Assembly: GCF_002113885.1 (NCBI RefSeq)
Contig: NW_018479852.1
Location: 1 to 64,000, forward strand
Length of the DNA: 64,000 nucleotides
Origin: Mizuhopecten yessoensis
Taxonomy: Eukaryota
Direction of reading: 5' to 3'
In this document: piece after piece, positions 1,908 through 64,000 of the stretch
Layout: each line of letters starts with the position of its first letter
Position numbering within the stretch: position 1 is the stretch's first letter
The notes under the pieces: model-generated
Database searches by the model: none
What the model was told of the DNA's origin: nothing
What the model saw: the letters and a program-made list of their open reading frames with translations, nothing else
Position numbers and translations under genes: made by a program

Positions 1908-3633
1908 ATGGCTTCGAGGAAGAAAAAAGACTACACAAAAGTGTTGTCAATTACAGAGTGTAATATCTGCCATTTGGATCTTTTCGACCCTCGTCGAATA
2001 GAGTGTGGACACGCCTTTTGCCTCCATTGTCTAAGTCAACACATAAGTTGTTCGTCTTCTTGTCCAACCTGTAAACGACCTATAAAGCCAAAATTAGGAA
2101 AGGTCGAAAACTACCCTGTTGCTATGGACATTGTGCACCTGCTGCAGTCTCTTCAAAACGTTGCAAGTAGCGGCCATATAGCAGATGAAGGAAGTTGTAC
2201 TGCAGATGATGTAAGGGGTGAAGAAGATGCGAACGAATATGAGGTTGTTGATTCTGACCCAGATCAAGGGGGGACTAAGACGTTACCTCAACAATCAAAG
2301 TCTGTCATGTCGAACGAAGAATGCGATATACATGGACAAAGAATAGTTTCTGTTTGTACCACTTGTGATGATGAACTTATCTGCGCCAAATGCAGCATCC
2401 ATTCTACCCACAATAAACTAGAGATATCTGAACATAATAGGCATCTCAAGCGACTACTCAAAAAACAAAGAGCTGATTTACTCCAACGGGGAAAAGATGA
2501 CGGAGCAAAAGAAGAAAGATTGCAGGAAATGATCGAAAAGCAAGTTCAACAAAAGGAAACCATTAGAGACGAGATAGAAGAAATTGCCGAGGAAATGTTC
2601 ACACAAATTCATATGAAAAAGGAAGAAATGCTTCGACCTATTGAGGAAAAGGCAGACGAATACGTCAAACAACTGACGGAGAGGCAGGAGGATATCAAAG
2701 ACAGAATATCTGAGTTCAGTCACATCAGCAACAGGATTGGAAAACTTTCGCATGATGACACAACAGACTATAGCAGAAAAGCAAAAAGATTGGTTAAACA
2801 AGCAAACATTGCACTCCTGATAGAAAACAAACCTGTACCACGTTACCGGAACATTGAGTTCACCAAGAATGACACAGTCCTAGAAGATCTGTCACAACTT
2901 CAGTTAGGTGATGTAAGGATAGATGAAGTATCAATAGCGCAGGACGAGGATGGGACAGCGTCCGACTTCTTTCCTGATGGGGAGAAATTGTACGTGAATG
3001 ATGTGTACCCGGACGATGTCCACACGTACGATGATTCAATCTCACCTCCACCACCCCCTCTTAGACCAAAACCGGAAAAATCTTATTATCCATTACCTAC
3101 ATCAGTGGCACGACCAACTATGGATGTTCGTCCTTTTTTTTCTCGCCCTCGTCCTCCACTTCCTCCACGACCTCAAAATCAATATCAAAATCAAAGTCTC
3201 CCAGCAGCTAAAAAAGATGAGCAAATCTACCATGACCTCGGCGATTCCCTATATGATAATACTACACGAAAACAAAAGCATGACACGGAACCTCCGGAAC
3301 AGAAAGAAGATGAACTGGACAGCCATTTCAATCCACCGCCATTATCTCCCTTTTCAGGAACATTTCGAAAATCGGTCTCTAAAGCAATCGACAACCGTGC
3401 ATTTCCGCAAAAATTGGTCCACCGTGTATTCCTCCCCTTTCGACCCTCGGGATTCACGGTTGTCCGAGGTTCAATCGGTCACTACTTTACATTTGTCACC
3501 GATGATAACGATGTGAAAATGTTTAGACAGAATGGATACTTATATAGGCCAATCACAGATCTCGTACGGGCGTTTGATGTTGCAAGCCAACAACATGGAG
3601 AGGCATGGACGCCATTGTACATAACGGATGAAG
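1908..3633 (+). CDS. TRIM-NHL copy 1, coding exon 1: RING (C3HC4), B-box2, coiled coil, Pro/Tyr-rich linker, first NHL blades
   Basis: CNIC..CGHAFCLHC..CPTC RING; CDIH..CTTC..CAKCSIHSTH B-box; heptad-rich helix; acceptor tttacag at 1894; donor G|GTAAAT at 3634 conserved in all complete copies. Confidence 0.92.
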
Positions 3634-3969
3634 GTAAATGATAACAAATGTCTACCTTTTGTAGTTGGAACATTGATAAAATAAATGGAAAGTGAAAATA
3701 ATGGAAATGTTTAATGAAGTTGAACTACAACCGTTACAACACAATTTGGTGGGTAAATGATCTTTATTATGCGAGAAAGGTGTCGCTTGTGAATTCGGAA
3801 ATCTTGTTAATACTTGTTTTTTACGATTGCAGATGTTGTAACATATACTTTCTATTCATTAAGGATTCCGTTTGTAAAACAAATTGCATTGATAAGTCGT
3901 TCATGTATATAACACAATGCAACATTTCTACTGAAATACATTTCTATATGTCTTATTATTTTAATTTAG

Positions 3970-4523
3970 GTCGAAGAACAGGAGATGGAAGTGTCAGGGT
4001 GTATACCTCCGAGGGAGAATTCCAGAAAGTGTTAGTGGGAAAGCTCAAGAAACCACAAGGAATTTCCATATCACGAGTGGGACTCGTTTACGTATGTGAC
4101 GAAGCAAATATCCTTGTGTTTTGTCCGAAAACGGGAAAAAGGAAGAGGATCATTTCTACCATTGGGAAAGATCCAATTTTTGTACGCCCTTTGTATGTGA
4201 TGGTGAGCGCCACTGGGAAGATTCTAGTCTCCGATGTGGGCACCAGAGAGCTCAAAATTCATGACGAAACCCGAAAGTACACCGACAAATTCAAACCAGA
4301 TGAGGACGAAGGGGAGCTTTACACAAGCTTCACTCCTGGAATGTGCGCCGAGGATTCTTCTTCGAATTACTACGTCATTGACCAGGAGAGAAACATACTT
4401 TATATATTGCGCGGTGGGGGGAGGTCAGAGAAGTTAGCGCTACCACAAAAGCCTCAGGGGCACGATGGAATACCAACAGCTGTATCCTTCGCCAACGATA
4501 CAGGGAACATTGTAGTGTTTTAG
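3970..4523 (+). CDS. TRIM-NHL copy 1, coding exon 2: remaining NHL blades (spliced CDS 2280 nt, ~759 aa)
   Basis: Acceptor tttag at 3969 restores frame (G|GT CGA AGA); NHL-type repeats KPQGISI..LVYVCD, RPLYVMV..ILVSD, YYVID; 554-nt exon in all four complete copies. Confidence 0.9.
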
Positions 4524-7562: not shown

Positions 7563-7611
7563 TCTATCCGTATAACAATTGCATCTGTCAATTAAAAGTC
7601 ATTGGAGCTTT

Positions 7612-9172
7612 GTAACTAATTACAGACCCATATCTATTCTTCCAATTTTATCCAAACTCTTAGAAAAACATGTGCAGACTACCTTTTATAAGTTTTTAAA
7701 CCAACACAATCTAATCATTGAGAATCAATCAGGATTTCGAAATATGCATTCATGTCAAACTGCTCTTACTGCACTTACAAATAGATGGTATGATGAATTG
7801 GACAAGGGAAACCTCATCGGTGTAATGTATATTGATTTTCGTAAGGCTTTTGACCTGGTTGACCATAAGATACTACTCCAGAAAATGAAAATATATGGAT
7901 GCTCTGAAAAATTCATTATGTTTTTTACCTCATACCTTTCAAACAGATTTCAGAAAGTATCTTTCAAAAGTTCTTTAAGTGATGCCTGTGAAATTACAAC
8001 TGGTGTACCTCAAGGTTCCATAATTGGGCCTTTGATGTTTTTATTATATGTCAATGATCTGCCACTCTGCTCAAAACATTGTGAACTTTTTATGTATGCA
8101 GATGATACTTCAATGCAAAAAGCAGACACAAATTTGGATGTTATCGAATCATGTCTACAAACGGATTTTAATCATGTAAAGAAATGGTGTGATGTCAACA
8201 AAATGGTCATAAATACTGATAAAACCAAAGTAATGTTAATTGGAAGTAAGCANNNNNNNNNNNNNNNNNNNNNNNNNNNNNNNNNNNNNNNNNNNNNNNN
8301 NNNNNNNNNNNNNNNNNNNNNNNNNNNNNNNNNNNNNNNNNNNNNNNNNNNNNNNNNNNNNNNNNNNNNNNNNNNNNNNNNNNNNNNNNNNNNNNNNNNN
8401 NNNNNNNNNNNNNNNNNNNNNNNNNNNNNNNNNNNNNNNNNNNNNNNNNNNNNNNNNNNNNNNNNNNNNNNNNNNNNNNNNNNNNNNNNNNNNNNNNNNN
8501 NNNNNNNNNNNNNNNNNNNNNNNNNNNNNNNNNNNNNNNNNNNNNNNNNNNNNNNNNNNNNNNNNNNNNNNNNNNNNNNNNNNNNNNNNNNNNNNNNNNN
8601 NNNNNNNNNNNNNNNNNNNNNNNNNNNNNNNNNNNNNNNNNNNNNNNNNNNNNNNNNNNNNNNNNNNNNNNNNNNNNNNNNNNNNNNNNNNNNNNNNNNN
8701 NNNNNNNNNNNNNNNNNNNNNNNNNTTTATCTTAATTACTATTCCTAATGCCCTAATCAACACTTTGGTATTAACTCACGCTACATTAGCGTATATTCTG
8801 TAATTTTTTACCCTTTGTCACAATGACATGTATGTATATTAGACGCATTATGCGTTTCTTAAATCTTCTAAAATGCAGCATGAGAATTTATGCATTGCAT
8901 GATATTTAGCCAACTTTTTATTTTCCAATACACGTGTGACATATTTTATTGTAAGCCTGTGTGATATCACATACCAATATATCTGTGATATGTATTACGT
9001 AGTTTTGTTATTGGATACAGGGTGCAAGAGTGTGTTGTTTTTATGTATGTACGTGTATGTCATATCCATGTTGTAAATATTGTACATTTTATGTCGACCA
9101 CATGTGAGACGAGTCATTGACTCAATGTGTTATCGAATTTAAATAAAGTCTATTATTATTATTATTATTATT
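7612..9172 (+). mobile_element. 5'-truncated L2/Crack-like (CR1 group) LINE, reverse transcriptase region, with N gap 8253-8725 and (ATT)n tail
   Basis: NYRPISILP, QSGFR, IDFRKAFD, GVPQGS, YADDT motifs; 3' end aaataaagtc(tat)n at 9141-9172. Confidence 0.88.
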
Positions 9173-10270: not shown

Positions 10271-13200
10271 GGTCACCCTAATAAGTGTCCAGGGAAGAAT
10301 GAGTACCCAGGGAGTGTCCAGGGAGTGTCCAAGGAGGTTTTTAGGGCACCCAGGAATTCGTTATTTATATTGTTTTACTTTTTTTCTTCTATTTCATACA
10401 TTTTATACTATTACCTATTTGTATGCACTGCTATTTCAGACATTCACATTTATAAACAAAGACATTTTATCAAATTGTTCAAAAGTCTAATGCGGACACA
10501 TTTGGAATATGCCACTTGCATATGGTCTCCAATGTTTAAAAAAGATCAAATTGCCATTGAAAATGTGCAACGCAGGGCAACAAGACGCCTACCATTCTTA
10601 AAAGGTCAATCCTACAGTGAAAGACTTTGTACACTTGGCCTCCCCAGTTTAGAATATAGAAGATTGAGAGGAGATGTCGTACAAACCTATAAAATCATCA
10701 ATGACATTTTGATAAAGACAAAATTATTAAAATGGCTACATTGGTCGGAAGATGAAACTCCAAAAAACTTTTTCAAGAGAAGGATGAGGCTTAGCGTTAC
10801 CAAGAACCTGTACAGTAGTAGGGCCGTGGACGTGTGGAACTCCCTCCCAAATATAGTTGTAGAAGCCCCCTCCCTGAATAGTTTTAAATCCCGGCTAAAC
10901 AATCACTGGCGTCATCATCACCACAAATTTGGACCTACATGTTGCTCACAACCGGACACAATTATAGAACAGTATCAAGATGCGTCTCAAGAACCTGGAT
11001 CAGCTTACATCGACGTCGACACTATATCAAAACTACATAAAAACAAGCAAAATTGACGGTCGATCGTAACAGTAGAAAGTACCGAAATACGCCGATAAAG
11101 GTGCCTATTTGGGATGAATTAGTGTCCAGGGAGATTTCCGCGCGCCCAGGAATTCGGTATTTAACTGTTTTTACTTTTTGTCTTCTGATTCATAAAAAGA
11201 ATGATCGTACCTAGGTGTGTGCAAAATTTCAGGTCGATCGTAACAGTAGAAAGCACCGAAATACGTCGATACATATTATAGTTACCAACGAGGAATGAAT
11301 ATCCAGGCAGGTTTTCGTGCGCCCAGGAATTCGTTATTGGATTTATTTCACTTTTTCTTCTGAGTCATTATTTATATTCACATAGTTAGCTGATATATTT
11401 TACCTCTTGAAATATATGAATGTCAGATAATAAATTTGTTATTGGCAAACTTGAAACGGAGCATATATGCCTTATCTTAGGTTATGTTTTTGTTATAAAT
11501 AATCGTTTATTTGAGCCAAATTCTTATCGGTCATGTGTCTGATTCGGTGGGATCAACCACATATAGTACATCAAGTATGAAACGTCCATAATTGACCACC
11601 GATTGGTCTGAATTGCGACAATACATGGTCAAGCTTGTTTATCAAGAAATACTTGTATTGGAGGGCACCAGGTGCACCTGGCATTGGGAAAAGAAAACCC
11701 AGTTCACAATGATTATTGGATAACTACTGCCGATAATTACCTGCACATAACAGGTAGACTTATCTGTCACATAAACTACCCACTCAGTTCTCTGATGTAA
11801 CAGGTGTACTGGATATGGAAAACAGAAAGCCCAGTCCAGCCGATAGTTACCTGTACATAACCACGGAATTATGTTATCTAAGTCCGTGACTTAACAGATA
11901 AACCTGTAGGTAACAGTTGTACTGGACCTGGTGAGAGCAAAAACCAGTACACAGCGATAATTGGATAATTACTGCCGATAGTAACCGGTACATAACAGAT
12001 ACACTTACCTGTATAACTACACACACAGTCCTCTGTTGTAAAAGTTATAATGGACATGTTTAAAAACACAGTACGCAACCATTGTAAAAACAACCATACA
12101 TCTTGCAGTTGTATGCGTTTTATATATAAAACATTTTAATTAAAAATGTTACGTTTCGTTTTACCAGTTAAATTAAAGGCATAAATTTCAGGTTTTCTTT
12201 CAATCTTAATTACATTTTATGATATATACTTAATGTGTAATCAATGAATTATCAAATAACTTACCACAGTTAAATAATATGTAAACATACAATAAACAAT
12301 ATCTACATAACATTTGTTCTTTTAGATTTTACTAAATTAATGCAAATATCTATAACATTTGTTACAATTTAATGATGAGAAGTTAACTTGTCAAATAAAA
12401 CTGAAAATATGTATATAACTATAACAATACATTAATTAGAGACAGAAGTAATAAATATAAAAAATAAAAAAAATACTATTGATTAGGAATATTCAGAACA
12501 TGTAATGTAAATTGATATTTGAAATAAATTTGGTGGCAATTATTTATTAAACAGTGTAATAAATATAAATGAATAAATACAATGGGCTCTTATCTAGAAC
12601 TGCACCCGCGTCATAGAGCATGGTAGCATTAGTTCTACAGGTAAGTCCGTACGAGTTAACGTTCCTTTCAATGCATATAGTGCTTGAGCTTGCAAACTTT
12701 TATCGACTTATTTCGATAGTTTGCACTGTTATGATCTACCTGAAAAGTTGCACATAGCTATAGGTAATTGGATATAATTTATATATAAAAATATCTATTA
12801 ACGAATTCCTGTTCATGCGGAAACCTACCTAGATACTCCCTGGACACTCATACCTCCATCATAAGCTGCGATGACGTAGATTTCTGACGACGACAGATTT
12901 GTTTTTATATATTGCGTCGTCAGAGCTACGAAGCAGTCCTTTGCCACTAATGGAGCAAAATCAAAAGTACTAATATGTAAAATTACCTATAATTCACGCC
13001 TCATATGAGTATAATGTTATAAAAATATTGCTTCATTGTTGAAATAACGAATCCTTACCAATGACAAAAACTCTTTCACGAAATTAGCTAAGTCCGTCTT
13101 GGGGAAAGAAAAATAGAAACGACTGCCATGACGCGTGATGTTATCTCAGTTATCCTTTCTATATATGGCATACATAGCCAAATATAGTATTACTACTGAT

Positions 13201-17380: not shown

Positions 17381-20006
17381 ATGACTTCAAGGAAGAAGAA
17401 AGACTACATGAAAGTGTTGTCAATAACAGAGTGTAACATCTGCCATTTGGATTTATCCGACCCTCGTCGGATAGAGTGTGGACACACCTTCTGTCTCCAT
17501 TGTTTAGGTAAACACGTAAGTTCTTCGTCTTCTTGTCCAACTTGTAAACGACCTATGAAACCAACATCTGGAAAGGTCGAAAATTATCCTGTTGCTATGG
17601 AAATAGTACACCTTCTGCAGACTCTTCAGAAGGTTGCAAGTTGCAGCAATATTGCAGGTGAGGAAGAGGATAAAACAGGTGAAGAGGATGAGTACCAATA
17701 TGTGGAGCTTGATACTGGTCAAGATGAGGTAAAGACTAAGACATTACCTCAACAATCAAAGTCTGTCATGTCGAACGATGTGTGCGATATACATGGACAA
17801 AGACTGGTATCTGTTTGTACCACTTGTGATGATGAACTCATCTGCGACAAATGCAGCATCCATTCGACCCACAATAAACAAGAGATATCTGAACATAATA
17901 GGCATCTCAAGCGACTACTCGAAAAACAAAGAGCGGATTTACTCCAACGGGAAAAGGATGACGTAGCAGAAGAAGAAACGTTGCAGGAAATGATCGAAAA
18001 GCAAGTTCAACAAAGGGAAATAATTAAAGACGAGATAGAAGAAATTACCGAGGAAATTTTTACACAAATTCAAATAAAAAAGGAAGAAATGCTTCGACCT
18101 ATTGAGGAAAAGGCAGACGAATACGTCAAACAACTGACGGAGAGGCAGGAGGATATCAAAGACAGGATATCTGAGTTTAGTCACATCAGCAACAGGATTG
18201 GAAAACTTTCGCATGATGACACAACAGACTACAGCAGAAAAGCAAAAAGATTGGTTAAACAAGCAAACATTGCACTCCTGATAGAAAACAAACCTGTACC
18301 ACGTTACCAGAACATTGAGTTCACCAAGAATGACACAGTCCTAGAAGATCTGTCACAACTTCAGTTAGGTGATGTAAGGATAGATGAAGTATCAATAGCG
18401 CAGGACGAGGAGGGTACAGCGTCCGACTTCTTTCCTGATGGGGAGAAAGTGTACGTGAATGATGTGTACCCGGACGATGTCTACACGTACGATGATTCAA
18501 TCTTACCTCCTCCACCAGCTCCTGTAAGACCAAAACCGGGAAAATCGTATCATCCATTACCTACACCAATGGCACCACCAACTATGGATGTTCCTTCTTT
18601 ATTTCCTCGCCCTCGTCCTCCACTTCCTCCACGACCTCAAAATCAATATCAAATCAAAGTCCCCCAGCAGCTAAAATCGAAGAGAAAATCTACCATGACC
18701 TGGGCGATTCTCTATCTGATAATACTATACGAAATCAAAAGCATGACATGGAACCTCTGGAACAGAAAAAAGATATACCGGACAGCCATTTCAATCCACC
18801 GCCATTATCTCCCTTTTCAGGAACATTTCGAAAATCGGCCTCTAAAGCAATCGACAACCGTGCATTTCCACAGAAATTGCTTCACCGTGTATTCCTACCC
18901 TTTAGACCCTCGGGGTTCACGGTTGTTCGAGGTTCTCTGGGACACTACTACACATTTGTCACAGATGATTACCACGTGAAAATGTTCAGAGAGAATGGAG
19001 ACTTCTATAGGACAATCACAGATCTCGTCCGGGCGTTCGATGCTGCAAGCCAACAACATGGCGAAGGCTTGACGCGTTTGTACATAACGGATGAAGGTAA
19101 ATGATAACAGCTATCTACCTTTTGTAGTTGGAATATTAATAAAATAGATGGTGAGTCAAAATAATGGCAATGTTTAATGAAGGTGAACTACAACCATTAC
19201 AACACAATTTGGTGGATATATGAACTTAATTATGCAAGAAAGGTGTCGCTTGGGAATTCGAAAATCATATTAAAACTTTGTTTTTACGATTATAGATGTT
19301 GTAACATATCCTTTTTTTTTTATTAAGGATACCGTTTGTAAAACAAATTGCATTGATAAGTCATTCATGTACATGAATATAACACAATGCAACATTTCTA
19401 TTGAAATAAATTTCTATGCGTCTTATCAAACTGACAAATTATTTTATTTTAGGACGAAGGACAGGAGATGGAAGTGTCAGGGTGTATACCTCCGAGGGAG
19501 AATTCCAGAAAGTGTTGGTTGGAAAGCTCAAGAAACCACAAGGAATTTCCATATCACGAGTGGGACTCGTTTACGTATGTGACGAAGCAAATATCCTTGT
19601 GTTTTGTCCAAAAACGGGGAAAAGAAAGAGGATCATTTCTACCATCGGGAGAGATCCAATTTTTGTACGCCCTTTGTATGTGATGGTGAGCGCCACTGGT
19701 AAGATTCTAGTCTCCGATGTTGGCACAAGAGAGCTCAAAATCCATGACGAAACCCGAAAGTACACCGACAAATTCAAACCAGATGAGGACGAAGGGGAGC
19801 TTTACACAAGCTTTACTCCTGGAATGTGTGCCGAGGATTCTTCTTCGAATTATTACGTCATTGACCAAGAGAGAAACATACTTTATATATTGCGCGGTGG
19901 GGGGAGGTCAGAGAAGCTAGCGCTACCACAAAAACCTCAGGGGCACGATGGAATACCAACAGCTGTATCCTTCGCCAACGATACAGGGAACATTGTAGTG
20001 TTTTAG
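17381..20006 (+). pseudogene. TRIM-NHL copy 2, frameshifted (exons 17381-19096 and 19453-20006), probable pseudogene
   Basis: Exon 1 is 1716 nt versus 1717 in copy 3; one A missing at ~18651 (tatcaaatcaaagt versus tatcaaaatcaaagt); upstream promoter/5' exon module deleted at 15931. Confidence 0.75.
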
Positions 20007-32091: not shown

Positions 32092-33808
32092 ATGACTTCA
32101 AGGAAGAAGAAAGACTACATGAAAGTGTTGTCAATAACAGAGTGTAACATCTGCCATTTGGATTTATCCGACCCTCGTCGGATAGAGTGTGGACACACCT
32201 TCTGTCTCCATTGTTTAGGTAAACACGTAAGTTCTTCGTCTTCTTGTCCAACTTGTAAACGACCTATGAAACCAACATCTGGAAAGGTCGAAAATTATCC
32301 TGTTGCTATGGAAATAGTACACCTTCTGCAGACACTTCAGAAGGTTGCAAGTTGCAGCAATATTGCAGGTGAGGAAGAGGATAAAACAGGGGAAGAGGAT
32401 GAGTACCAATATGTGGAGCTTGATACTGATCAAGATGAGGTAAAGACTAAGACATTACCTCAACAATCAAAGTCTGTCATGTCGAACGATGTATGCGATA
32501 TACATGGACAAAGACTGGTATCTGTTTGTACCACTTGTGATGATGAACTCATCTGCGACAAATGCAGCATCCATTCGACCCACAATAAACAAGAGATATC
32601 TGAACATAATAGGCATCTCAAGCGACTACTCGAAAAACAAAGAGCGGATTTACTCCAACGGGAAAAGGATGACGTAGCAGAAGAAGAAACGTTGCAGGAA
32701 ATGATCGAAAAGCAAGTTCAACAAAGGGAAATAATTAAAGACGAGATAGAAGAAATTACCGAGGAAATTTTTACACAAATTCACATGAAAAAGGAAGAAA
32801 TGCTTCGACCTATTGAGGAAAAGGCAGACGAATACGTCAAACAACTGACGGAGAGGCAGGAGGATATCAAAGACAGGCTATCTGAGTTTAGTCACATCAG
32901 CAACAGGATTGGAAAACTTTCGCATGATGACACAACAGACTACAGCAGAAAAGCAAAAAGATTGGTTAAACAAGCAAACATTGCACTCCTGATAGAAAAC
33001 AAACCTGTACCACGTTACCAGAACATTGAGTTCACCAAGAATGACACAGTCCTAGAAGATCTGTCACAACTTCAGTTAGGTGATGTAAGGATAGATGAAG
33101 TATCAATAGCGCAGGACGAGGAGGGTACAGCGTCCGACTTCTTTCCTGATGGGGAGAAAGTGTACGTGAATGATGTGTACCCGGACGATGTCTACACGTA
33201 CGATGATTCAATCTTACCTCCTCCACCAGCTCCTGTAAGACCAAAACCGGGAAAATCGTATCATCCATTACCTACACCAATGGCACCACCAACTATGGAT
33301 GTTCCTTCTTTATTTCCTCGCCCTCGTCCTCCACTTCCTCCACGACCTCAAAATCAATATCAAAATCAAAGTCCCCCAGCAGCTAAAAACGAAGAGAAAA
33401 TCTACCATGACCTGGACGATTCTCTATCTGATAATACTATACGGAATCAAAAGCATGACACGGAACCTCTGGAACAGAAAGAAGATATACCGGACAGCCA
33501 TTTCAATCCACCGCCATTATCTCCCTTTTCAGGAACATTTCGAAAATCGGCCTCTAAAGCAATTGACAACCGTGCATTTCCACAGAAATTGCTTCACCGT
33601 GTATTCCTCCCCTTTAGACCCTCGGGGTTCACGGTTGTTCGAGGTTCTCTGGGACACTACTACACATTTGTCACAGATGATTACCACGTGAAAATGTTCA
33701 GAGAGAATGGAGACTTCTATAGGACAATCACAGATCTCGTCCGGGCGTTCGATGCTGCAAGCCAACAACATGGCGAAGGCTTGACGCTTTTGTACATAAC
33801 GGATGAAG
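32092..33808 (+). CDS. TRIM-NHL copy 3, coding exon 1
   Basis: Intact ORF; acceptor tttcag at 32082; RING, B-box, coiled coil; donor G|GTAAAT at 33809. Confidence 0.92.
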
Positions 33809-34161
33809 GTAAATGATAACAGCTATCTACCTTTTGTAGTTGGAATATTAATAAAATAGATGGTGAGTCAAAATAATGGCAATGTTTAATGAAGGTGAAC
33901 TACAACCATTACAACACAATTTGGTGGATATATGAACTTAATTATGCAAGAAAGGTGTCGCTTGGGAATTCAAAAATCATATTAAAACTTCGTTTTTACG
34001 ATTATAGATGTTGTAACATATCCTTTTTTTATTAAGGATACCGTTTGTAAAATAAATTGCATTGATAAGTCATTCATGTACATGAATATAACACAATGCA
34101 ACATTTCTATTGAAATAAATTTCTATGCGTCTTATTAAACTGACAAATTATTTTATTTTAG

Positions 34162-34715
34162 GACGAAGGACAGGAGATGGAAGTGTCAGGGTGTATACCT
34201 CCGAGGGAGAATTCCAGAAAGTGTTGGTTGGAAAGCTCAAGAAACCACAAGGAATTTCCATATCACGAGTGGGACTCGTTTACGTATGTGACGAAGCAAA
34301 TATCCTTGTGTTTTGTCCAAAAACGGGGAAAAGAAAGAGGATCATTTCTACCATCGGGAGGGATCCAATTTTTGTATGCCCTTTGTATGTGATGGTGAGC
34401 GCCACTGGGAAGATTCTAGTCTCCGATGTTGGCACAAGAGAGCTCAAAATCCATGACGAAACCCGAAAGTACACCGACAAATTCAAACCAGATGAGGACG
34501 AAGGGGAGCTTTACACAAGCTTTACTCCTGGAATGTGTGCCGAGGATTCTTCTTCGAATTATTACGTCATTGACCAAGAGAGAAACATTCTTTATATATT
34601 GCGCGGTGGGGGGAGGTCAGAGAAGCTAGCGCTACCACAAAAACCTCAGGGGCACGATGGAATACCAACAGCTGTATCTTTCGCCAACGATACAGGGAAC
34701 ATTGTAGTGTTTTAG
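34162..34715 (+). CDS. TRIM-NHL copy 3, coding exon 2 (spliced ~756 aa)
   Basis: Acceptor ttttag at 34161; 554-nt NHL exon. Confidence 0.9.
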
Positions 34716-45548: not shown

Positions 45549-47461
45549 TTCTACTTCTACTTCTAAATGGTACTGACCAACTTCAACAATTTGAAGATAA
45601 AATGTCAGACGAGGAGTGAAACATGGAAAGAGAGTGTTTTTAAAAGATACGAGATGGTCTAATTTGCGTTTGAAAGGTGACGGTAGAGGGCTGATTTGAA
45701 TAATTCCGTTGGTGGGCTCGAAATAATGTCAAGTGGGAGTTTATTCCACTCGGGTATAGTTCGAGGGAAGAATGATGCCTTTCTGATCTGGGTTTTTGAG
45801 TGGGGAATTTTATACGAAAACTGGTGGTTTGTTCGGGATTTTCTAACTGTAGGGATTTACGATAGCGACTTTCTGGTTTACAATGTTATGAAGCATGGTT
45901 AGACGAGCATCTCTACGTCTATCTGCTAGAGGGCGCAGCTTCAGGTGGTCCAACATTTCTGACACACTGGAGGTACGATGGTTGTACCTGTGCTTATTGA
46001 GCACATAGTGCGCTGCCCTTCGCTGGACCATTTCCAACTTGTCAATATTTGTTTGGGTGTGAGGGTCCCATACTGTACAGGCATACTCAAGTGATGGTCG
46101 AACTAATGATTTGTATGCCTGTATTTTGGCTGATGTTGAGCCAATTTTAAGATTTCGTCTTAAAAAGCCTAGGGTAGAATTTGCTTTTGGGCATATAGTA
46201 TTTATATGTGAATCCCATTTAAGGTCAGATGATAGTGTTACACCCAGATACTTGGNNNNNNNTTGTAGCATTTAGACCCACAGGGATATCGTTTATAAAG
46301 TAAAGAAATAAACTGGGTCCCAAAACTGACCCCTGGGGTACCCCGGAATGGACATCGACAAAATCAGACTTCTCCCCTTCAACTACTACTGTCTGAGTTC
46401 TACCGGTCAGGAAACTCTCGATCCAGTTTGCGACATTTCCACGTATACCATAATGTTTTAGTTTATGGTTTAGGAGAGAATGACTGACCTTGTCGAAAGC
46501 CTTAGCAAAGTCCATTATGAGGATATCTGTTTGGCGTCCCTCATCAAGATTCTTTGAGATGTCATCCACAAATTCAAGAAGTTGGGTTTCGCATGATCGC
46601 GATTTGCGAAAACCATGTTGGAACGGATACAATATGTTATGGGTATCGGCATGGGTCATGATAGTTGAGACCACAATGTGTTCCATAATTTTGCTACAGA
46701 TACAGGTCAGAGATATGGGCCTGTAGTTTTCTGGGTGAAATTTTGGACCCTTTTTATAAGCAGGTGATACATTTGCAGATTTCCAGTCTGAAGGCACTAT
46801 ACCTGTTTCCAGAGACTGATTAAATATTAGGGTTAATATCGGGGCTATTTCTGTTGCAAGCTCTTTTAGTACTCTGTGTTTGATGTCATCAGGGCCCGAG
46901 GCCTTGTATGGATTTAGGCCTTGGAGCAGTTTTAAGACGCCCTTTTCATGTATAGAAATTTCAGGCATGGCAGGGTATTTATCGTGAGTAGACATGTTGC
47001 ATCTAGTGCGAAACTGCTGGTCGGTAAAGATTTCAGGAGGAGTAAAAACAGGTTGAAATTGTGCGTTTAGCACCTGGGCCTTGGTGGTAGGGTCATAAAC
47101 AAGTTTACCGTCCTTTTTCAGAGGATCTATGCCACTATGGTCTGATCGTTTGGATTTTATATATGAACAAAACCGTTTTTTGCAGGAAAATTTGTTTTCA
47201 TTGGTTGTGTTTTCTGGGGTGATGATATTATCAATATGGCTCCAGTAAGATGTAAGGAGTTTTTTCTGCATATGATGTTTCAGGTTTTTATACTTATTTT
47301 TTATTTCAGTGTCTCCTGATTTTTTTGATCGTTTGTACAATCTATTTTTTCTCCTGATAAGTTTCTTTATGTCAGGGGTAACCCAAGGTAGGCTGGGTTT
47401 TGTCTTAACTATCTTGTGGGAGATATGTTCTTTTATGAGTTTAGACAATTCAATTTTTCAA
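45549..47461 (-). mobile_element. 5'-truncated CR1-group LINE (RT-containing ORF2) inserted antisense in the first intron of copy 4; (TAGAAG)n tail
   Basis: [48 protein letters not shown]; the N gap 46255-46262 covers the expected xADD motif; empty site gcatac|gtaac seen at 896-906. Confidence 0.93.
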
Positions 47462-48488: not shown

Positions 48489-50163
48489 ATGGCTTCAAGG
48501 AAGAAAAAAGACTACACAAAAGTGTTATCAATTACAGAGTGTAATATCTGCCATTTGGATCTTTCCGACCCTCGTCGGATAGAGTGTGGACACGTCTTCT
48601 GCCTCCATTGTCTAAGTCAACACGTAAGTTGTTCGTCTTCTTGTCCAACTTGTAAACGACCTATGAAGCCAAAATTAGGAACGGTCGAAAACTACCCTGT
48701 TGCTATGGAAATTGTACACCTGCTGCAGTCTCTTCAAAAAGTTGCAAGTTGCGGCCATATAGTAGATGAAGGAAGTTGTACTGAAGATAATGTAAAGGGT
48801 GAAGAAGATGCGAACGAATATGATGTAGTTGATTCTGACCCAGATCTGGGGGAGACTAAGACGTTACCTCAAAAATCAAAATCTGTCATGTCGAACGAAG
48901 TGTGCGATATACATGGACAAAGACTGGTTTCTGTTTGTACCACTTGTGATGATGAACTTATCTGCGCCAAATGCAGCATCCATTCTACCCACAATAAACA
49001 AGAGATATCTGAACATAATAGGCATCTCAAGCGACTACTCGAAAAACAAAGAGCTGATTTACTCCAACGGGGAAAAGATGACGGAGCAAAAGAAGAAATA
49101 TTGCAGGAAATGATCGAAGAGCAAGTTCAACAAAAGGAAACCATTAAAGACGAGATAGAAGAAATTGCCGAGGAAATGTTCACACAAATTCATATGAAAA
49201 AGGAAGAAATGCTTTTACCTATTGAGGAAAAGGCAGACGAATACGTCAAACAACTGACGGAGAGGCAGGAGGATATCAAAGACAGGATATCTGTGTTCAG
49301 TCACATCAGCAACAGGATTGGAAAAATTTCACATGATGACACAACAGACTACAGCAGAAAAGCAAAAATATTGGTTAAACAAGCAAACATTGCACTCCAG
49401 ATAGAATACAAACCTGTACCACGTTACCAGAACATTGAGTTCACCAAGAATGACAAAGTCCTAGAAGATCTGTTAAAACTTCAGTTAGGTGATGTAAAGG
49501 TAGATGAAGTATCAATAGCGCAGGACGAGGAGGGTAAAGCGTCCGATTTCATTTCTGATGAGGAGGAAGGATACAATGACTGTAATTGCACGGACGATGG
49601 CTCAGTCGTGCCTCCACCACCTCCTGTGAGACCAAAATATAATTATCCATTACCTACACATATGTCACAGTCATCTATGGATCCTCCACTTCCTCCACGA
49701 CCTCAAAATCAATATCAAAATCAAAGTCCCCTAGCATCTAAAAACGAAGAGGAAATCTACTATGACCTTGGCGATTCCATATATGTCAATCCTATACGGA
49801 AACAAAAGCACGACACGGAACCTCCAGAACAGAAAGAACATAAACTGGACAGCCATTTCACTCCACCGCCATTATCTCCCTTTTCAGGAACATTTCGAAA
49901 ATCGGTCTCTTTACCAATCGACAACCGTGCGTTTCAACAGAGATTGCTTCACCGTGTATTCCTCCCCTTTAGACCCTCGGGGTTCACGGTTGTCCGAGGT
50001 TCTATGGGACACTACTTTACATTTGTCACAGATGATTTCCACGTGAAAATGTTCAGAGAGACTGGAGACTTATATAGGACAATAACAGATGTCGTCCGAG
50101 CGTTTGATGCTGCAAGCCAACAACATGGAGAGGCATTGACGCCATTGTACATAACAGATGAAG
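48489..50163 (+). CDS. TRIM-NHL copy 4, coding exon 1
   Basis: Intact ORF; acceptor tttacag at 48475; donor G|GTAAAA at 50164. Confidence 0.92.
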
Positions 50164-50681
50164 GTAAAAGATAACAACTTTCTGGTCGGAATATTAATAT
50201 GAAAAATATAATTTTGAAACAATAATCGAAATAAAACAAGTGTTGTTGTGTCATGGATATATACGACCAAACCAAAACACTAACACATTTTGTTGTTCGT
50301 CTGTAACAATTAATAATGATACTGATAGATAAACAAAATTTGAGCAAGCTAAGTCAGAAGTCAAAAGAATGCAAACATTCAAGGAAGTGAACTAAAATCG
50401 ATACAATACAATTGGTTAAGATATATGAACTGGATAATGCAAGAAATGTGTCGCGTGAGAAGTCGAATAACAGGTGGATATTTAGTTTTACGATGTTGTA
50501 ACATATACATTCTATTAATTCTGAATTGGAAAACAGGTTATGAGAATAATTAATGGTAATAAACAAGTAAAAACGGATATCGTTACATTAATTAGTCATT
50601 ATTGTATATAACACAATGCAAAATTTCTGATTAAATAAATTTCTATGCATTTTATTGAACTGATAAATTATTTCATTTAAG

Positions 50682-51235
50682 GACGAAGGACAGGAGATGG
50701 AAGTGTCAAAGTGTATACGTCCGAGGGAGAATTCCAGAAAGTGTTGGTTGGAAAGCTTAAGAAACCACAAGGAATTTCAATATCACGAGTGGGACTTGTT
50801 TACGTATGTGACGAAGTAAATATCCTTGTGTTTTGTCCAAAAACGGGGAAAAGGAAGAGGATAATATCTACCATCGGGAAAGATCCAATTTTTGTACACC
50901 CATTGTATGTGATGGTGAGCGCCACTGGAAAGATCCTAGTCTCCGATGTGGGCACTAGGGAGCTCAAAATTCATGACGAAACCCGAAAGTACACCGACAA
51001 GTTCAAACCAGACGAGGACGAAGGGGAGCTTTACACAAGCTTTACTCCTGGAATGTGTGCCGAGGATTCTTCTTCGAATTATTACGTCATTGACCAAGAG
51101 AGAAACATACTTTATATATTGCGCGGTGGGGGGAGGTCAGAGAAGCTGGTGCTACCACAAAAACCTCAGGGGCACGATGGAATACCAACAACTGTTTCCT
51201 TTGCCAACGATACGGGCAACATTGTCGTGTTTTAG
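50682..51235 (+). CDS. TRIM-NHL copy 4, coding exon 2 (spliced ~742 aa)
   Basis: 554-nt NHL exon; acceptor is AAG (50679-50681) rather than TAG. Confidence 0.85.
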
Positions 51236-63549: not shown

Positions 63550-64000
63550 ATGGCTTCAAGGAAGAAAAAAGACTACACGAAGGTGTTGTCAATTACAGAG
63601 TGTAATATCTGCCATTTTGAGTTATACGAACCTCGTCGGATAGAGTGTGGACACGTCTTCTGCCTCCATTGTCTAAGTCAACACGTAAGTTGTTCGTCTT
63701 CTTGTCCAACTTGCAAGCGACCTATGAAACCAAAATTAGGAAAGGTCGAAAACTACCCTGTTGCTATGGAAATAGTACACCTGCTGCAGTCTCTTCAAAA
63801 GGTTGCAAGTTGCGGCCATATAGCAGATGAAGAAAGTAGTACAAAAGAGGATGGAAAAGGCGAGGAAGATGCGTATCAATATGAGGTAGTTGATTCTGAC
63901 CCAGATCAGGAGGAGACTAAGACGTTACCTCAACACTCAAAGTCTGTCATGTCGAACGAAGTGTGCGATATACATGGACAAAGAGTAGTTTCTGTTTGTA
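63550..64000 (+). CDS. TRIM-NHL copy 5, N-terminal part (RING to start of B-box), truncated by the window end; not in the ORF track
   Basis: MASRKKKDYTKVLSITECNICHFELYEPRRIECGHVFCLHCL...; acceptor tttacag at 63536; no stop seen. Confidence 0.9.
   Translation, partial: MASRKKKDYTKVLSITECNICHFELYEPRRIECGHVFCLHCLSQHVSCSSSCPTCKRPMKPKLGKVENYPVAMEIVHLLQSLQKVASCGHIADEESSTKEDGKGEEDAYQYEVVDSDPDQEETKTLPQHSKSVMSNEVCDIHGQRVVSVC

What the first reader, a model, noticed from the sequence alone, without database searches (positions are those of the whole stretch)
2840..3400. TRIM-NHL E3 ligase carrying a tyrosine-kinase adaptor-like linker (YxN, acidic-Tyr and PxxPxR clusters)
Seen: between the coiled coil and NHL, where TRIM2/3/71 have a filamin domain, these proteins have ~150 aa of low-complexity sequence holding Y(R/Q)N, YVN (2991-2999), YQN, YDN, EQIYHDL, PPPPLRPK and RPPLPPR. 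A second acidic-Tyr motif (EDANEYEVV / EEDEYQYV / EEDAYQYEVV) sits where B-box1 would be. Established: pYxN is the Grb2-SH2 consensus, PxxPxR is a class II SH3 ligand (SOS/Cbl type), and acidic residues before Tyr favour Src/Syk-type kinases. Inference: an expanded family of Cbl-like scaffold/E3 hybrids coupling an NHL sensor to phosphotyrosine signalling. I do not recognise this architecture from characterised TRIM-NHL proteins.
Basis: partly seen in the sequence, partly recalled or inferred. Interest (0 to 1): 0.8.

Follow-up and report, generated by a model that had tools for sequence, protein, structure and literature searches.

The report
Scallop TRIM-NHL ligases with motif-bearing linkers
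Five tandem scallop genes encode ordinary TRIM32-type RING/B-box/coiled-coil/NHL ubiquitin ligases whose disordered linkers carry one robustly conserved SH3-type proline motif and several less secure tyrosine motifs, so the proposed link to tyrosine-kinase signalling is plausible but unproven.

Summary
The window is from Mizuhopecten yessoensis (Yesso scallop). It holds five tandem two-exon paralogs; copy 2 is frameshifted and copy 5 is cut by the window end. They encode RING, B-box2, coiled coil, a ~140-aa linker and a six-bladed NHL propeller.

The linker looks disordered: no Pfam domain, AF2 pLDDT ~25, 18% Pro, and dN/dS 0.6-0.9 against 0.03-0.07 for the NHL exon.

Conservation across 14 relatives in three scallop genera:
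- **PxΦPPR (aa 416-421):** the only statistically robust island. It is an exact class II SH3 consensus, by my reading of the alignment in about 10 of the 13 sequences that span the site.
- **Acidic YxxΦ (aa 111-114):** Tyr and the +3 aliphatic are kept in all 12 sequences that have the region. Tyr441 is kept in 7 of 8.
- **YxN (Grb2-type):** not conserved in position, but about 3-fold enriched over shuffles, also in independent homologs.

The acidic YxxΦ sites match a FUNDC1-like LC3-interacting motif as well as an SH2 ligand. Lacking a filamin domain is normal for TRIM32, Thin and Mei-P26. No phosphorylation or binding could be tested.

Verdict: observation confirmed, interpretation partly supported. 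This is a new variant of a known kind, of moderate interest.

The parts
1908..3633 (+). Copy 1, exon 1 (aa 1-575 plus the first base of Gly576): RING, linker, B-box2, coiled coil, linker and the first ~95 aa of the NHL domain. GT donor at 3634.
   Evidence: ORF; splice inferred from the sequence. Database protein P0001 (LOC110441370, 759 aa) begins exactly with this exon.
3970..4523 (+). Copy 1, exon 2 (rest of the NHL propeller plus stop). AG acceptor at 3968-3969.
   Evidence: The last 184 aa of P0001 show 0 mismatches to it.
1956..2075 (+). RING finger, C3HC4 (aa 17-56)
   Evidence: Pfam RING models: 23.5 bits in copy 1 (below cut-off), 27-31 bits in copies 2-4 (at or above cut-off). All eight Zn ligands are visible and invariant among the window copies that were aligned.
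2217..2258 (+). Acidic YxxΦ[D/N] motif in the RING-B-box linker (aa 104-117; Y111, V114, D115)
   Evidence: Tyr and the +3 aliphatic are present in all 12 homologs that have the region; +4 is D or N in all. In the reduced set of divergent lineages, Y111 and V114 each score 8/8 by residue class. The window-mean permutation test is not significant, P=0.11.
2322..2435 (+). B-box type 2 (aa 139-176)
   Evidence: zf-B_box and ANCHR-like_BBOX hits are sub-threshold (18-22 bits). The Cys/His ligand pattern is conserved in A4.
2442..2927 (+).
   Evidence: AF2 helices 170-282 and 285-305; TRIM_CC sub-threshold. P311 is invariant and Y313 is 9/9, but N315 is only 1/9.
2928..3341 (+). Disordered CC-NHL linker (aa 341-478), 18% Pro, 5.8% Tyr
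   Evidence: No Pfam hit. pLDDT ~25 with no secondary structure. On the disordered side of the charge-hydropathy boundary. dN/dS 0.58-0.94. No fold match in the ESM Atlas.
3048..3071 (+). Poly-Pro / first PxxPxR (PPPPLRPK, aa 381-388)
   Evidence: Moderately conserved (5-6 of 9). Not significant as a window (P=0.27).
3150..3170 (+). Conserved class II SH3-type motif RPPLPPR (aa 415-421; P-x-L/I-P-P-R)
   Evidence: P416 is invariant. By my reading of alignment A4, an exact PxΦPx[RK] is kept in about 10 of the 13 homologs that span the site. It is the best-conserved island of the linker (P<0.0005).
3219..3239 (+). Acidic I-Y-x-D-L motif (EQIYHDL, aa 438-444)
   Evidence: Y441 is conserved in 7 of 8 and L444 by class in 5 of 8. 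YxxL/I is readable in most homologs. Not significant as a window.
2991..2999 (+). YVN (aa 362-364). Y362 is semi-conserved; the Asn is not.
3183..3191 (+). YQN (aa 426-428), confined to the M. yessoensis cluster
3252..3260 (+). YDN (aa 449-451), partly conserved: YDN, YVN, YSN; Tyr lost in copy 3 and in P0005
3342..3633 (+). Conserved lead-in (SPFSGTFRKSVS) and first blades of the NHL propeller (aa 479-575)
   Evidence: AF2 NHL model pLDDT 86.3. Foldseek top matches are Thin, Lin41, TRIM2 and TRIM71 NHL.
17381..20006 (+). Copy 2 (exon 1 from 17381, exon 2 19453-20006). The reading frame is broken by a 1-bp deletion in an A-run just after 18650.
32092..34715 (+). Copy 3 (exon 1 32092-33808, exon 2 34162-34715)
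48489..51235 (+). Copy 4 (exon 1 48489-50166, exon 2 50682-51235). It lacks the YVN/YPDD block and part of the Pro-rich stretch.
63550..64000 (+). Copy 5, first 150 aa only (cut by the window end); equals protein P0004
   Evidence: tblastn, 100% over aa 1-150

Best explanation
These genes encode TRIM32/Thin-type TRIM-NHL RING E3 ubiquitin ligases.

Shown here:
- The protein has a RING, one B-box2, a long coiled coil and a six-bladed NHL propeller.
- The propeller is under very strong purifying selection.
- The folded parts are joined by two linkers that look disordered and evolve fast.
- The linkers keep a few short islands across scallop genera.

Inferred:
- The linkers are docking platforms for modular-domain proteins.
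- The invariant P-x-L/I-P-P-R at aa 416-421 binds an SH3 domain as a class II ligand, of the kind the N-SH3 of Grb2/Drk recognises.
- The Tyr residues sit in E/D(-3,-4), I(-1), N/D(+2), L/I/V(+3) contexts, which suit Src/Syk-type kinases.
- Once phosphorylated, these Tyr act as SH2 docking or regulatory sites.
- The conserved core is YxxΦ. The YxN (Grb2-type) sites are kept only by turnover.

The net effect would be to recruit or switch a dimeric E3 at tyrosine-kinase signalling complexes. The constant NHL domain would supply the substrate or RNA.
For: - **Architecture:** Pfam RING, B-box and TRIM_CC hits. PDB sequence hits to TRIM2/3/71/Thin NHL at E 2.6e-11. NHL model pLDDT 86.3, with Foldseek top matches Thin, Lin41 and TRIM2.
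- **Disorder:**
- **Selection:** linker dN/dS 0.58-0.94 against NHL exon 2 at 0.03-0.07, with dS 0.17-0.31.
- **PxΦPPR:** the only significant conserved island of the linker. By my reading of the alignment it is exact in about 10 of 13 homologs from three genera. It recurs as PPIPPR in a separate scallop TRIM-NHL, P0021.
- **Conserved Tyr:** Y111 with Φ114 in 12 of 12; Y441 in 7 of 8.
- **Independent homologs:** YxN 9 observed vs 3.1 expected (p=0.003). Yxx[LIV] 15 vs 7.7 (p=0.005).
- **Unbiased Tyr-context scan:** E(-3) and N(+2) rank among the three strongest contexts in both sequence sets, and are the top two in the independent set.
- **One positionally kept YxN:** a site conserved between Argopecten and Pecten paralogs (YIN, YMN, YTN, YIN, YRN).
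- **Reader domains exist:** at least 48 SH2 exon matches in the same genome.
- **Consensus definitions:** pYxNx for the Grb2/Drk SH2 and PxxPxR for the N-SH3 (PMC10968029, PMC11203457).
Against: - No phosphorylation, expression or binding evidence of any kind.
- Short motifs have high false-positive rates.
- Only the Pro motif passes a strict column-permutation test. The Tyr windows do not (P=0.11 to 1.0).
- The enrichment p-values do not survive Bonferroni correction over 160 contexts, and the sequences are related.
- Copy 4 and P0005 lack several of the motifs.
- +4 D/N is invariant at motif 1, a feature shared with the FUNDC1 LIR and not needed by SH2 domains.
- PPLP-type stretches can also bind WW, profilin or EVH1 modules.
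Confidence: 0.4

Rival explanations
1. The acidic YxxΦ motifs (aa 111-114 and 441-444) are LC3/GABARAP-interacting regions. The proteins would be TRIM-type selective-autophagy receptors or regulators. Tyr phosphorylation might switch the LIR off, as in FUNDC1. The Pro motif would still bind some SH3/WW partner.
For: - Motif 1 (acidic run, then Y-E/D-x-V/I/L-D/N) is close to the crystallographically defined FUNDC1 LIR peptide DYESDDDSYEVLDLTE. Its Y18xxL21 core is phosphorylated by Src (PMC5233613).
- Tyr, the +3 aliphatic and the +4 D/N are present in all 12 homologs.
- TRIM proteins are described as LIR-bearing autophagy scaffolds (PMC10790450).
- Atg8-family exons are present in this genome.
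Against: - Tyr-type LIRs are the minority class (my own knowledge).
- Ile at -1 and Glu at -3/-4 in motif 3 resemble the Src substrate optimum (my own knowledge).
- A LIR reading does not explain the YxN enrichment or the conserved PxΦPPR.
- No Atg8 binding could be tested, because a full-length scallop Atg8 was not available by reference.
Confidence: 0.25
2. The linker is a Tyr/Pro/Asp-rich disordered spacer. Its Tyr residues would act as generic 'stickers' for condensate or RNP-granule formation, or it would simply set the distance between coiled coil and NHL. There would be no dedicated SH2 or LIR partners.
For: - Tyr content is held at 6-9 per linker in all 12 homologs, although most positions are not conserved.
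- The linker as a whole evolves almost neutrally.
- It is rich in indels.
- IDR-driven condensation of TRIM proteins has been reported (bioRxiv 10.1101/2025.01.02.630836, seen as an abstract only).
Against: - A sticker model does not predict an invariant PxΦPPR.
- It does not predict the invariant +3 aliphatic and +4 D/N at Y111.
- It does not predict the specific E(-3)/N(+2) context of Tyr beyond composition.
Confidence: 0.2
3. The motifs have no function. They would be chance products of a Pro/Tyr/Asp/Asn-rich composition, internal micro-duplications (YVNDV-YPDDV-HTYDD) and shared ancestry among few, closely related scallop sequences.
For: - Only 14 related sequences from three named species and one unnamed run.
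- Most Tyr windows are not significant.
- The p-values are uncorrected.
- Linker dN/dS reaches 0.94.
- Motifs are lost in copy 4, P0005 and P0012.
Against: - PxΦPPR is retained at 45-65% overall identity in a linker that is otherwise unalignable.
- Y111 and Φ114 are invariant in 12 of 12.
- The YxN and Yxx[LIV] excess was replicated in homologs that were not used to form the hypothesis.
Confidence: 0.15

Closest known systems
TRIM32 / Drosophila Thin (Abba)
   Same: RING, a single B-box2, coiled coil, a non-globular linker and a six-bladed NHL, with no filamin domain. The Thin NHL is the top structural match (E 2.9e-12). Both belong to TRIM subfamily C (PMC3503706).
   Different: Only about 21% identity in the NHL. 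The scallop family is lineage-restricted and tandemly duplicated. Its linkers carry a conserved PxΦPPR and acidic Tyr motifs; I did not check these in TRIM32 or Thin.
TRIM2 / TRIM3 / TRIM71 (LIN-41)
   Same: These are the best PDB sequence matches of the NHL domain (E 2.6e-11) and have the same RBCC-NHL order.
   Different: They have a filamin/ABP280 repeat between coiled coil and NHL. None is detected here; a disordered segment of ~140 aa takes that place.
Cbl-family RING E3 adaptors
   Same: A RING E3 combined with a Pro-rich SH3-ligand region and Tyr motifs in a disordered part. This is a working analogy for how the scallop proteins might be recruited to kinase complexes.
   Different: No TKB (four-helix/EF-hand/SH2) domain, no UBA, and no sequence homology. 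Cbl reads phosphotyrosine itself, whereas here the protein would only be read. It is not a family member.
FUNDC1 LC3-interacting region (Y18-E-V-L)
   Same: An acidic run followed by Y-E-V-L/V-D. The Tyr is a Src site that gates LC3 binding (PMC5233613).
   Different: FUNDC1 is a mitochondrial outer-membrane protein, unrelated in fold. The resemblance covers about 10 residues and was not tested by binding.
SOS1 / Gab-type Grb2 ligands (PxxPxR; pYxN)
   Same: aa 416-421 fit the PxxPxR preference of the N-SH3. YVN, YQN and YDN fit pYxNx (PMC10968029). Shc-type pYVNV is the reference peptide.
   Different: Motif-level similarity only. The YxN sites here shift position between paralogs.

Membership tests
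TRIM (RBCC) subfamily C, TRIM-NHL | N-terminal C3HC4 RING finger | tested here: met
   Pfam zf-C3HC4_2 scores 27.2-31.4 bits in copies 2-4 (cut-off 27) and 23.5 in copy 1. All eight Cys/His ligands are present and invariant among the window copies that were aligned.
TRIM (RBCC) subfamily C, TRIM-NHL | B-box zinc finger after the RING | tested here: met
   One B-box2 at aa 139-176. Pfam zf-B_box scores 21.7-21.8 (cut-off 24.1), so it is sub-threshold, but the Cys/His pattern is intact and conserved in all homologs. Relative P0016 passes at 29.5 bits. No B-box1.
TRIM (RBCC) subfamily C, TRIM-NHL | Coiled coil following the B-box | tested here: met
   AF2 helices 170-282 and 285-305 at pLDDT 70-82. 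TRIM_CC is sub-threshold.
TRIM (RBCC) subfamily C, TRIM-NHL | C-terminal six-bladed NHL beta-propeller | tested here: met
   phmmer against the PDB: TRIM2, TRIM3, TRIM71 and Thin NHL at E 2.6e-11 to 9e-8. AF2 model pLDDT 86.3 with 24 strands. Foldseek: Thin, Lin41, TRIM2, TRIM71, Mei-P26 and Brat NHL, probability 1.00. The Pfam NHL repeat alone is sub-threshold (17.9-19.5 vs 20).
TRIM2/3/71 subgroup | Filamin/ABP280 repeat between coiled coil and NHL | tested here: not met
   No Filamin hit in any copy at E<=1. The control relatives P0074, P0063 and P0081 show one.
Cbl-family E3 adaptors | Tyrosine-kinase-binding (TKB) domain with an embedded SH2, N-terminal to the RING | tested here: not met
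   No such domain in the Pfam scans. The RING starts at aa 17.
Class II SH3 ligand | P-x-Φ-P-x-[RK] in an accessible, disordered segment, conserved among orthologs | tested here: met
   aa 416-421. By my reading of the alignment, exact in about 10 of 13 homologs. Best-conserved island of the linker (P<0.0005). pLDDT ~25.
Class II SH3 ligand | Physical binding to an SH3 domain | not testable with these tools
   No full-length scallop SH3 adaptor was available by reference. No complex job was sent.
Grb2/Drk SH2 ligand (pYxN) | Y-x-N present more often than composition predicts | tested here: met
   4 vs 0.38 in copy 1. 9 vs 3.1 in independent homologs, p=0.003. N(+2) is among the top Tyr contexts.
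Grb2/Drk SH2 ligand (pYxN) | The YxN sites are conserved in position among orthologs | tested here: not met
   The windows 362-364, 426-428 and 449-451 are no better conserved than the linker mean. N315 is 1/9. One different YxN site is shared by Argopecten and Pecten paralogs but is absent from window copies 1-3, judged from their proteins P0001-P0003.
Grb2/Drk SH2 ligand (pYxN) | The tyrosine is phosphorylated in vivo | not testable with these tools
   No phosphoproteome is available here.
LIR/AIM (Atg8-interacting motif) | [W/F/Y]-x-x-[L/I/V] core preceded by acidic residues, in a disordered region, conserved | tested here: met
   aa 111-114 in 12 of 12 homologs, with an acidic run at -3 to -7 and D/N at +4. 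It resembles the FUNDC1 LIR.
LIR/AIM (Atg8-interacting motif) | Binding to an Atg8-family protein | not tested
   Only Atg8 exons and mis-called fragments could be referenced.

The most novel reading that the evidence does not exclude
A scallop-specific family of TRIM-NHL E3 ligases is wired into phosphotyrosine signalling. Src/Syk-type kinases would phosphorylate the acidic Tyr sites. A Grb2/Drk-like adaptor would clamp the linker bivalently: SH2 on pYxN or pYxxΦ, and N-SH3 on PxΦPPR. The dimeric ligase would thereby be brought to activated receptors. There its invariant NHL domain would select protein or RNA targets. Functionally this is a Cbl analogue built on a TRIM-NHL chassis, with paralogs differing mainly in their motif complement.
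Probability: 0.15. Interest if true: 0.65.

Novelty: new variant of a known kind. Interest (0 to 1): 0.35.

Why it matters
TRIM-NHL proteins (TRIM32, TRIM71, Brat, Mei-P26) are known mainly through their NHL domains. How they are recruited or switched is poorly understood.

A family in which the NHL is frozen (dN/dS 0.03-0.07), while paralogs differ in motif-bearing linkers, points to regulation through docking motifs. If that holds, it would give a simple model for coupling an NHL ligase to SH3/SH2 signalling or to autophagy.

The hypothesis can be tested with peptides and point mutants. If the motifs prove inert, the locus is simply one more lineage-specific TRIM expansion in a bivalve.

Tried and rejected
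1. **Full-length AF2 model on 9 sequences:** poor (mean pLDDT 47.8). It was used only for the coiled-coil helices and as weak support for disorder.
2. **Testing the LIR reading by complex prediction:** the genome holds Atg8 exons. A search with the largest exon returned only fragments and intron read-through models of at most 116 aa. The same applies to Grb2/Drk SH2 and SH3 domains.
3. **Alignment-based word search for more family members:** returned no sequence that I did not already have. The exhaustive representative search found only 10 clusters at E<1e-30, all from scallops or one unnamed run.
4. **ESM Atlas look-alikes of the linker:** nothing usable.
5. **Literature searches for scallop or bivalve TRIM-NHL descriptions:** found no paper on this family. 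One paper lists only a B-box orthogroup expansion in bivalves (PMC8382680).
6. **PPxY (WW) motifs:** none present.
7. **ITAM reading of YHDL-x4-YDN:** rejected, because the second site lacks L/I at +3 and the spacing is too short (my own knowledge of the consensus).
8. **SUMO-interaction motif reading of YEVVDSD:** rejected, because other homologs keep only two hydrophobic positions.
9. **Spliced protein:** never assembled by me. The database protein P0001, which matches both exons exactly, was used instead.
10. **Human DNA:** no contig was taken for human.
Full report
**What is there.** The exon-1 ORF at 1908-3638 is 100% identical to the N-terminal 577 aa of an annotated 759-aa protein of Mizuhopecten yessoensis (LOC110441370, P0001). 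So the window is Yesso scallop DNA.

The gene has two exons:
- Exon 1 is 1908-3633, followed by a GT donor.
- Exon 2 is 3970-4523, preceded by an AG acceptor.
- Codon 576 (Gly) is split across the junction.

P0001 begins exactly with exon 1 and ends exactly with exon 2 (0 mismatches), so I used it by reference.

The window holds five tandem paralogs about 15-16 kb apart, on the + strand:
- Copy 1 at 1908.
- Copy 2 at 17381, with its frame broken by a 1-bp deletion in an A-run just after 18650.
- Copy 3 at 32092.
- Copy 4 at 48489.
- Copy 5 from 63550, only the first 150 aa, cut by the window end.

**Architecture.** The domain order is as follows.
- RING at aa 17-56. It has C3HC4 with all ligands. 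Pfam scores are above cut-off in copies 2-4 and just below in copy 1.
- An acidic linker without a B-box1.
- A B-box2 at aa 139-176. The Pfam score is sub-threshold, but the ligand pattern is intact.
- A long helix at aa 170-305.
- A Pro/Tyr/Asp-rich stretch of about 140 aa.
- A C-terminal beta-propeller.

The propeller is an NHL domain:
- phmmer against the PDB gives TRIM2, TRIM3, TRIM71 and Thin NHL domains at E 2.6e-11 to 9e-8.
- An AF2 model of aa 470-759 on a 25-sequence alignment reaches pLDDT 86.3 and pTM 0.87.
- Foldseek ranks Drosophila Thin first, followed by Lin41, TRIM2, TRIM71, TRIM3, Mei-P26 and Brat.

No filamin repeat is detected, while the control relatives P0074, P0063 and P0081 show one. 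RING/B-box2/coiled-coil/linker/NHL without filamin is the TRIM32, Thin and Mei-P26 arrangement within TRIM subfamily C (PMC3503706). The domain architecture itself is therefore not new.

**Checking the observation.** Every motif is at the coordinates given. Against 20,000 composition-preserving shuffles of the copy-1 stretch:
- YxN occurs 4 times against 0.38 expected, and no shuffle reaches 4.
- PxxPx[RK] occurs 2 times against 0.46 expected (P=0.07).
- The remaining patterns are unremarkable.

The interval 2840-3400 is not all linker. Its start (P311, Y313) belongs to a conserved segment after the coiled coil. Its end (SPFSGTFRKSVS) is the conserved lead-in to the propeller.

**Is it disordered?** Several lines agree.
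- There is no Pfam hit.
- In the full-length AF2 model, residues 306-514 have almost no secondary structure and pLDDT about 25. That model is poor overall.
- The segment lies on the disordered side of the charge-hydropathy boundary. It has 18% Pro and 17% order-promoting residues.
- No fold match turned up in the ESM Atlas.
- The alignment is full of indels.
- Among copies 1, 3 and 4 the linker has dN/dS 0.58-0.94. The RING has about 0.2, and the NHL exon 2 has 0.03-0.07 at dS 0.17-0.31.

The propeller is therefore strongly constrained, not merely homogenised. The paralogs differ mainly in their linkers.

**Relatives.**
- The word search found 11 proteins.
- The exhaustive search of 1.84 billion representatives found 10 clusters at E<1e-30.
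- A profile word search added none.
- All named members come from three scallops: M. yessoensis, Pecten maximus and Argopecten irradians. One further member comes from an unnamed sequencing run.
- The next relatives are RING-less B-box/coiled-coil/NHL proteins of scallops (P0015, P0016). After them come generic NHL proteins.

I used the 14-sequence alignment A4 and a reduced set of divergent lineages.

1. P-x-L/I-P-P-R at aa 416-421.
   - Its column identities are 9, 6, 4, 7, 8 and 7 of 9, in a linker whose typical column scores 0-2.
   - In a column-permutation test, no permuted linker produced a six-column window as conserved (P<0.0005).
   - By my reading of the alignment, about 10 of the 13 sequences that span the site keep an exact class II consensus.
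2. The acidic motif between RING and B-box2.
   - It keeps Tyr111, an aliphatic at +3 and D/N at +4 in all 12 sequences that have the region.
   - It usually has an acidic residue at +1 and an acidic run upstream.
   - As a five-column window it reaches only P=0.11, because the wildcard positions vary.
3. Tyr441 is kept in 7 of 8, with L/I/V at +3 in most. The window test is not significant.
   - N315 is 1/9.
   - The windows 362-364, 426-428 and 449-451 sit at the linker mean.

YxN nevertheless recurs elsewhere:
- Argopecten and Pecten paralogs share a different YxN site (YIN, YMN, YTN, YIN, YRN) that copies 1-3 lack.
- In eight homologs not used to form the hypothesis, YxN is 9 observed vs 3.1 expected (p=0.003). 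Yxx[LIV] is 15 vs 7.7 (p=0.005).
- An unbiased scan of all residues at -4 to +4 around Tyr puts E(-3) and N(+2) on top in the independent set. Both are among the three strongest in the window cluster. D(+2) and D(-3) come next in the independent set.

These p-values are uncorrected, and the sequences are related, so I treat them as suggestive.

A separate scallop TRIM-NHL shows the same grammar. P0021 has about 30% identity in the NHL, and its linker carries PPIPPR and an acidic YTN.

**Mechanism.**

The secure inference is an SH3-type docking site at aa 416-421. PxxPxR is the stated preference of the Grb2 N-SH3 (PMC10968029).

The Tyr sites can be read in two ways.
- Their context (Glu/Asp at -3/-4, Ile at -1 in motif 3, Asn/Asp at +2, aliphatic at +3) suits Src/Syk-type kinases and SH2 readers. 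The kinase preference is my own knowledge. The pYxNx rule for Grb2 and for its fly homologue Drk is from PMC10968029 and PMC11203457. The genome has at least 48 SH2 exon matches.
- Motif 1 also closely resembles the FUNDC1 LC3-interacting region, peptide DYESDDDSYEVLDLTE with core Y18xxL21. That Tyr is itself a Src site which gates LC3B binding (PMC5233613). TRIM proteins are discussed as LIR-bearing autophagy scaffolds (PMC10790450).

I could not discriminate between the two readings. Only Atg8 exons and mis-called fragments were available by reference, so no complex prediction was sent.

A third reading treats Tyr as a generic 'sticker' in a condensate-forming IDR. It fits the steady Tyr count of 6-9 per linker in all homologs. 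It does not fit the invariant Pro motif or the specific Tyr contexts.

**Comparison and verdict.**

The proteins are members of the TRIM-NHL group, TRIM32/Thin type. They are not members of the Cbl family, which needs a TKB domain. 'Cbl-like' is only a functional analogy.

It is strong for the SH3-type site and suggestive for phospho-Tyr docking.
- The four named YxN sites fail the positional conservation test, so the Grb2-SH2 reading rests on enrichment alone.
- An LIR alternative is of similar weight for the acidic YxxΦ sites.
- I rate this a new variant of a known kind, of moderate interest. Everything beyond motif conservation awaits phosphoproteomics and binding assays.

The dS pattern is mosaic. 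Copy 1 is close to copy 4 in the RING-to-coiled-coil part and close to copy 3 in the coiled coil and linker. This agrees with the earlier first-reader note s1-508115 that copy 1 is a mosaic, and it points to gene conversion within the array.

Noticed in passing
window 18640-18660 (copy 2): Copy 2 lacks one A of the run TATCAAAATC, which the other three copies keep. This shifts the frame after QNQYQ. It is either a young pseudogene or a homopolymer assembly error. Downstream sequence is otherwise intact in the shifted frame.
   Followed up: yes
window 1908-4523, 32092-34715, 48489-51235: Synonymous divergence between copies is mosaic. Copies 1 and 4 have dS 0.04-0.14 from RING to coiled coil but 0.29 in the linker. 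Copies 1 and 3 have dS 0.09-0.10 in coiled coil and linker but 0.36-0.53 in the RING region. This indicates gene conversion or recombination within the array.
   Followed up: partly
window 3970-4523, 34162-34715, 50682-51235 (exon 2): The NHL exon is 97-99% identical in protein although dS is 0.17-0.31 (dN/dS 0.03-0.07). That is unusually strong purifying selection for a tandemly expanded gene. The ligand-binding module is not diversifying.
   Followed up: yes
window 32092-33808 plus 50682-51235: The deposited protein P0002 ('Tripartite motif-containing protein 10') consists of exon 1 of copy 3 joined to exon 2 of copy 4, with 0 mismatches. It has 6 mismatches to copy 3's own exon 2. This is probably a gene-model artefact that skips about 16 kb.
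   Followed up: yes
window 7579-8748 (+), 10325-11056 (+), 46225-47448 (-): The first and third are ORFs with reverse-transcriptase-like sequence (non-LTR retrotransposon type by eye). The second (10325-11056) is a further large unannotated intergenic ORF that I did not examine. All three lie between the TRIM copies. The first is interrupted by a run of N at about 8240-8730, which I did not fill or look up.
   Followed up: no
protein P0021 (M. yessoensis, another scaffold): A separate TRIM-NHL ('TRIM3-like', with two B-boxes) also has a filamin-less Pro/Tyr-rich linker, carrying PPIPPR and an acidic YTN. The motif grammar may therefore be older than, or convergent with, the family studied here.
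   Followed up: partly
proteins P0015 and P0016 (M. yessoensis, A. irradians): The nearest outgroup proteins lack the RING (B-box, coiled coil, ~280-aa linker, NHL). Their linkers hold acidic Tyr clusters and YxxL sites at matching places (for example LYESLL and EYERLL).
   Followed up: no
It has low pLDDT in the NHL model and contains a basic RKSxS stretch that could be a Ser-kinase site or a propeller-closing element.
   Followed up: no
window 3291-3308 (aa 462-467, PPEQKE): A P-x-E-x-x-acidic string resembles the TRAF6-binding consensus (recalled from memory). It is present only in the M. yessoensis cluster, not in Pecten or Argopecten homologs.
   Followed up: no
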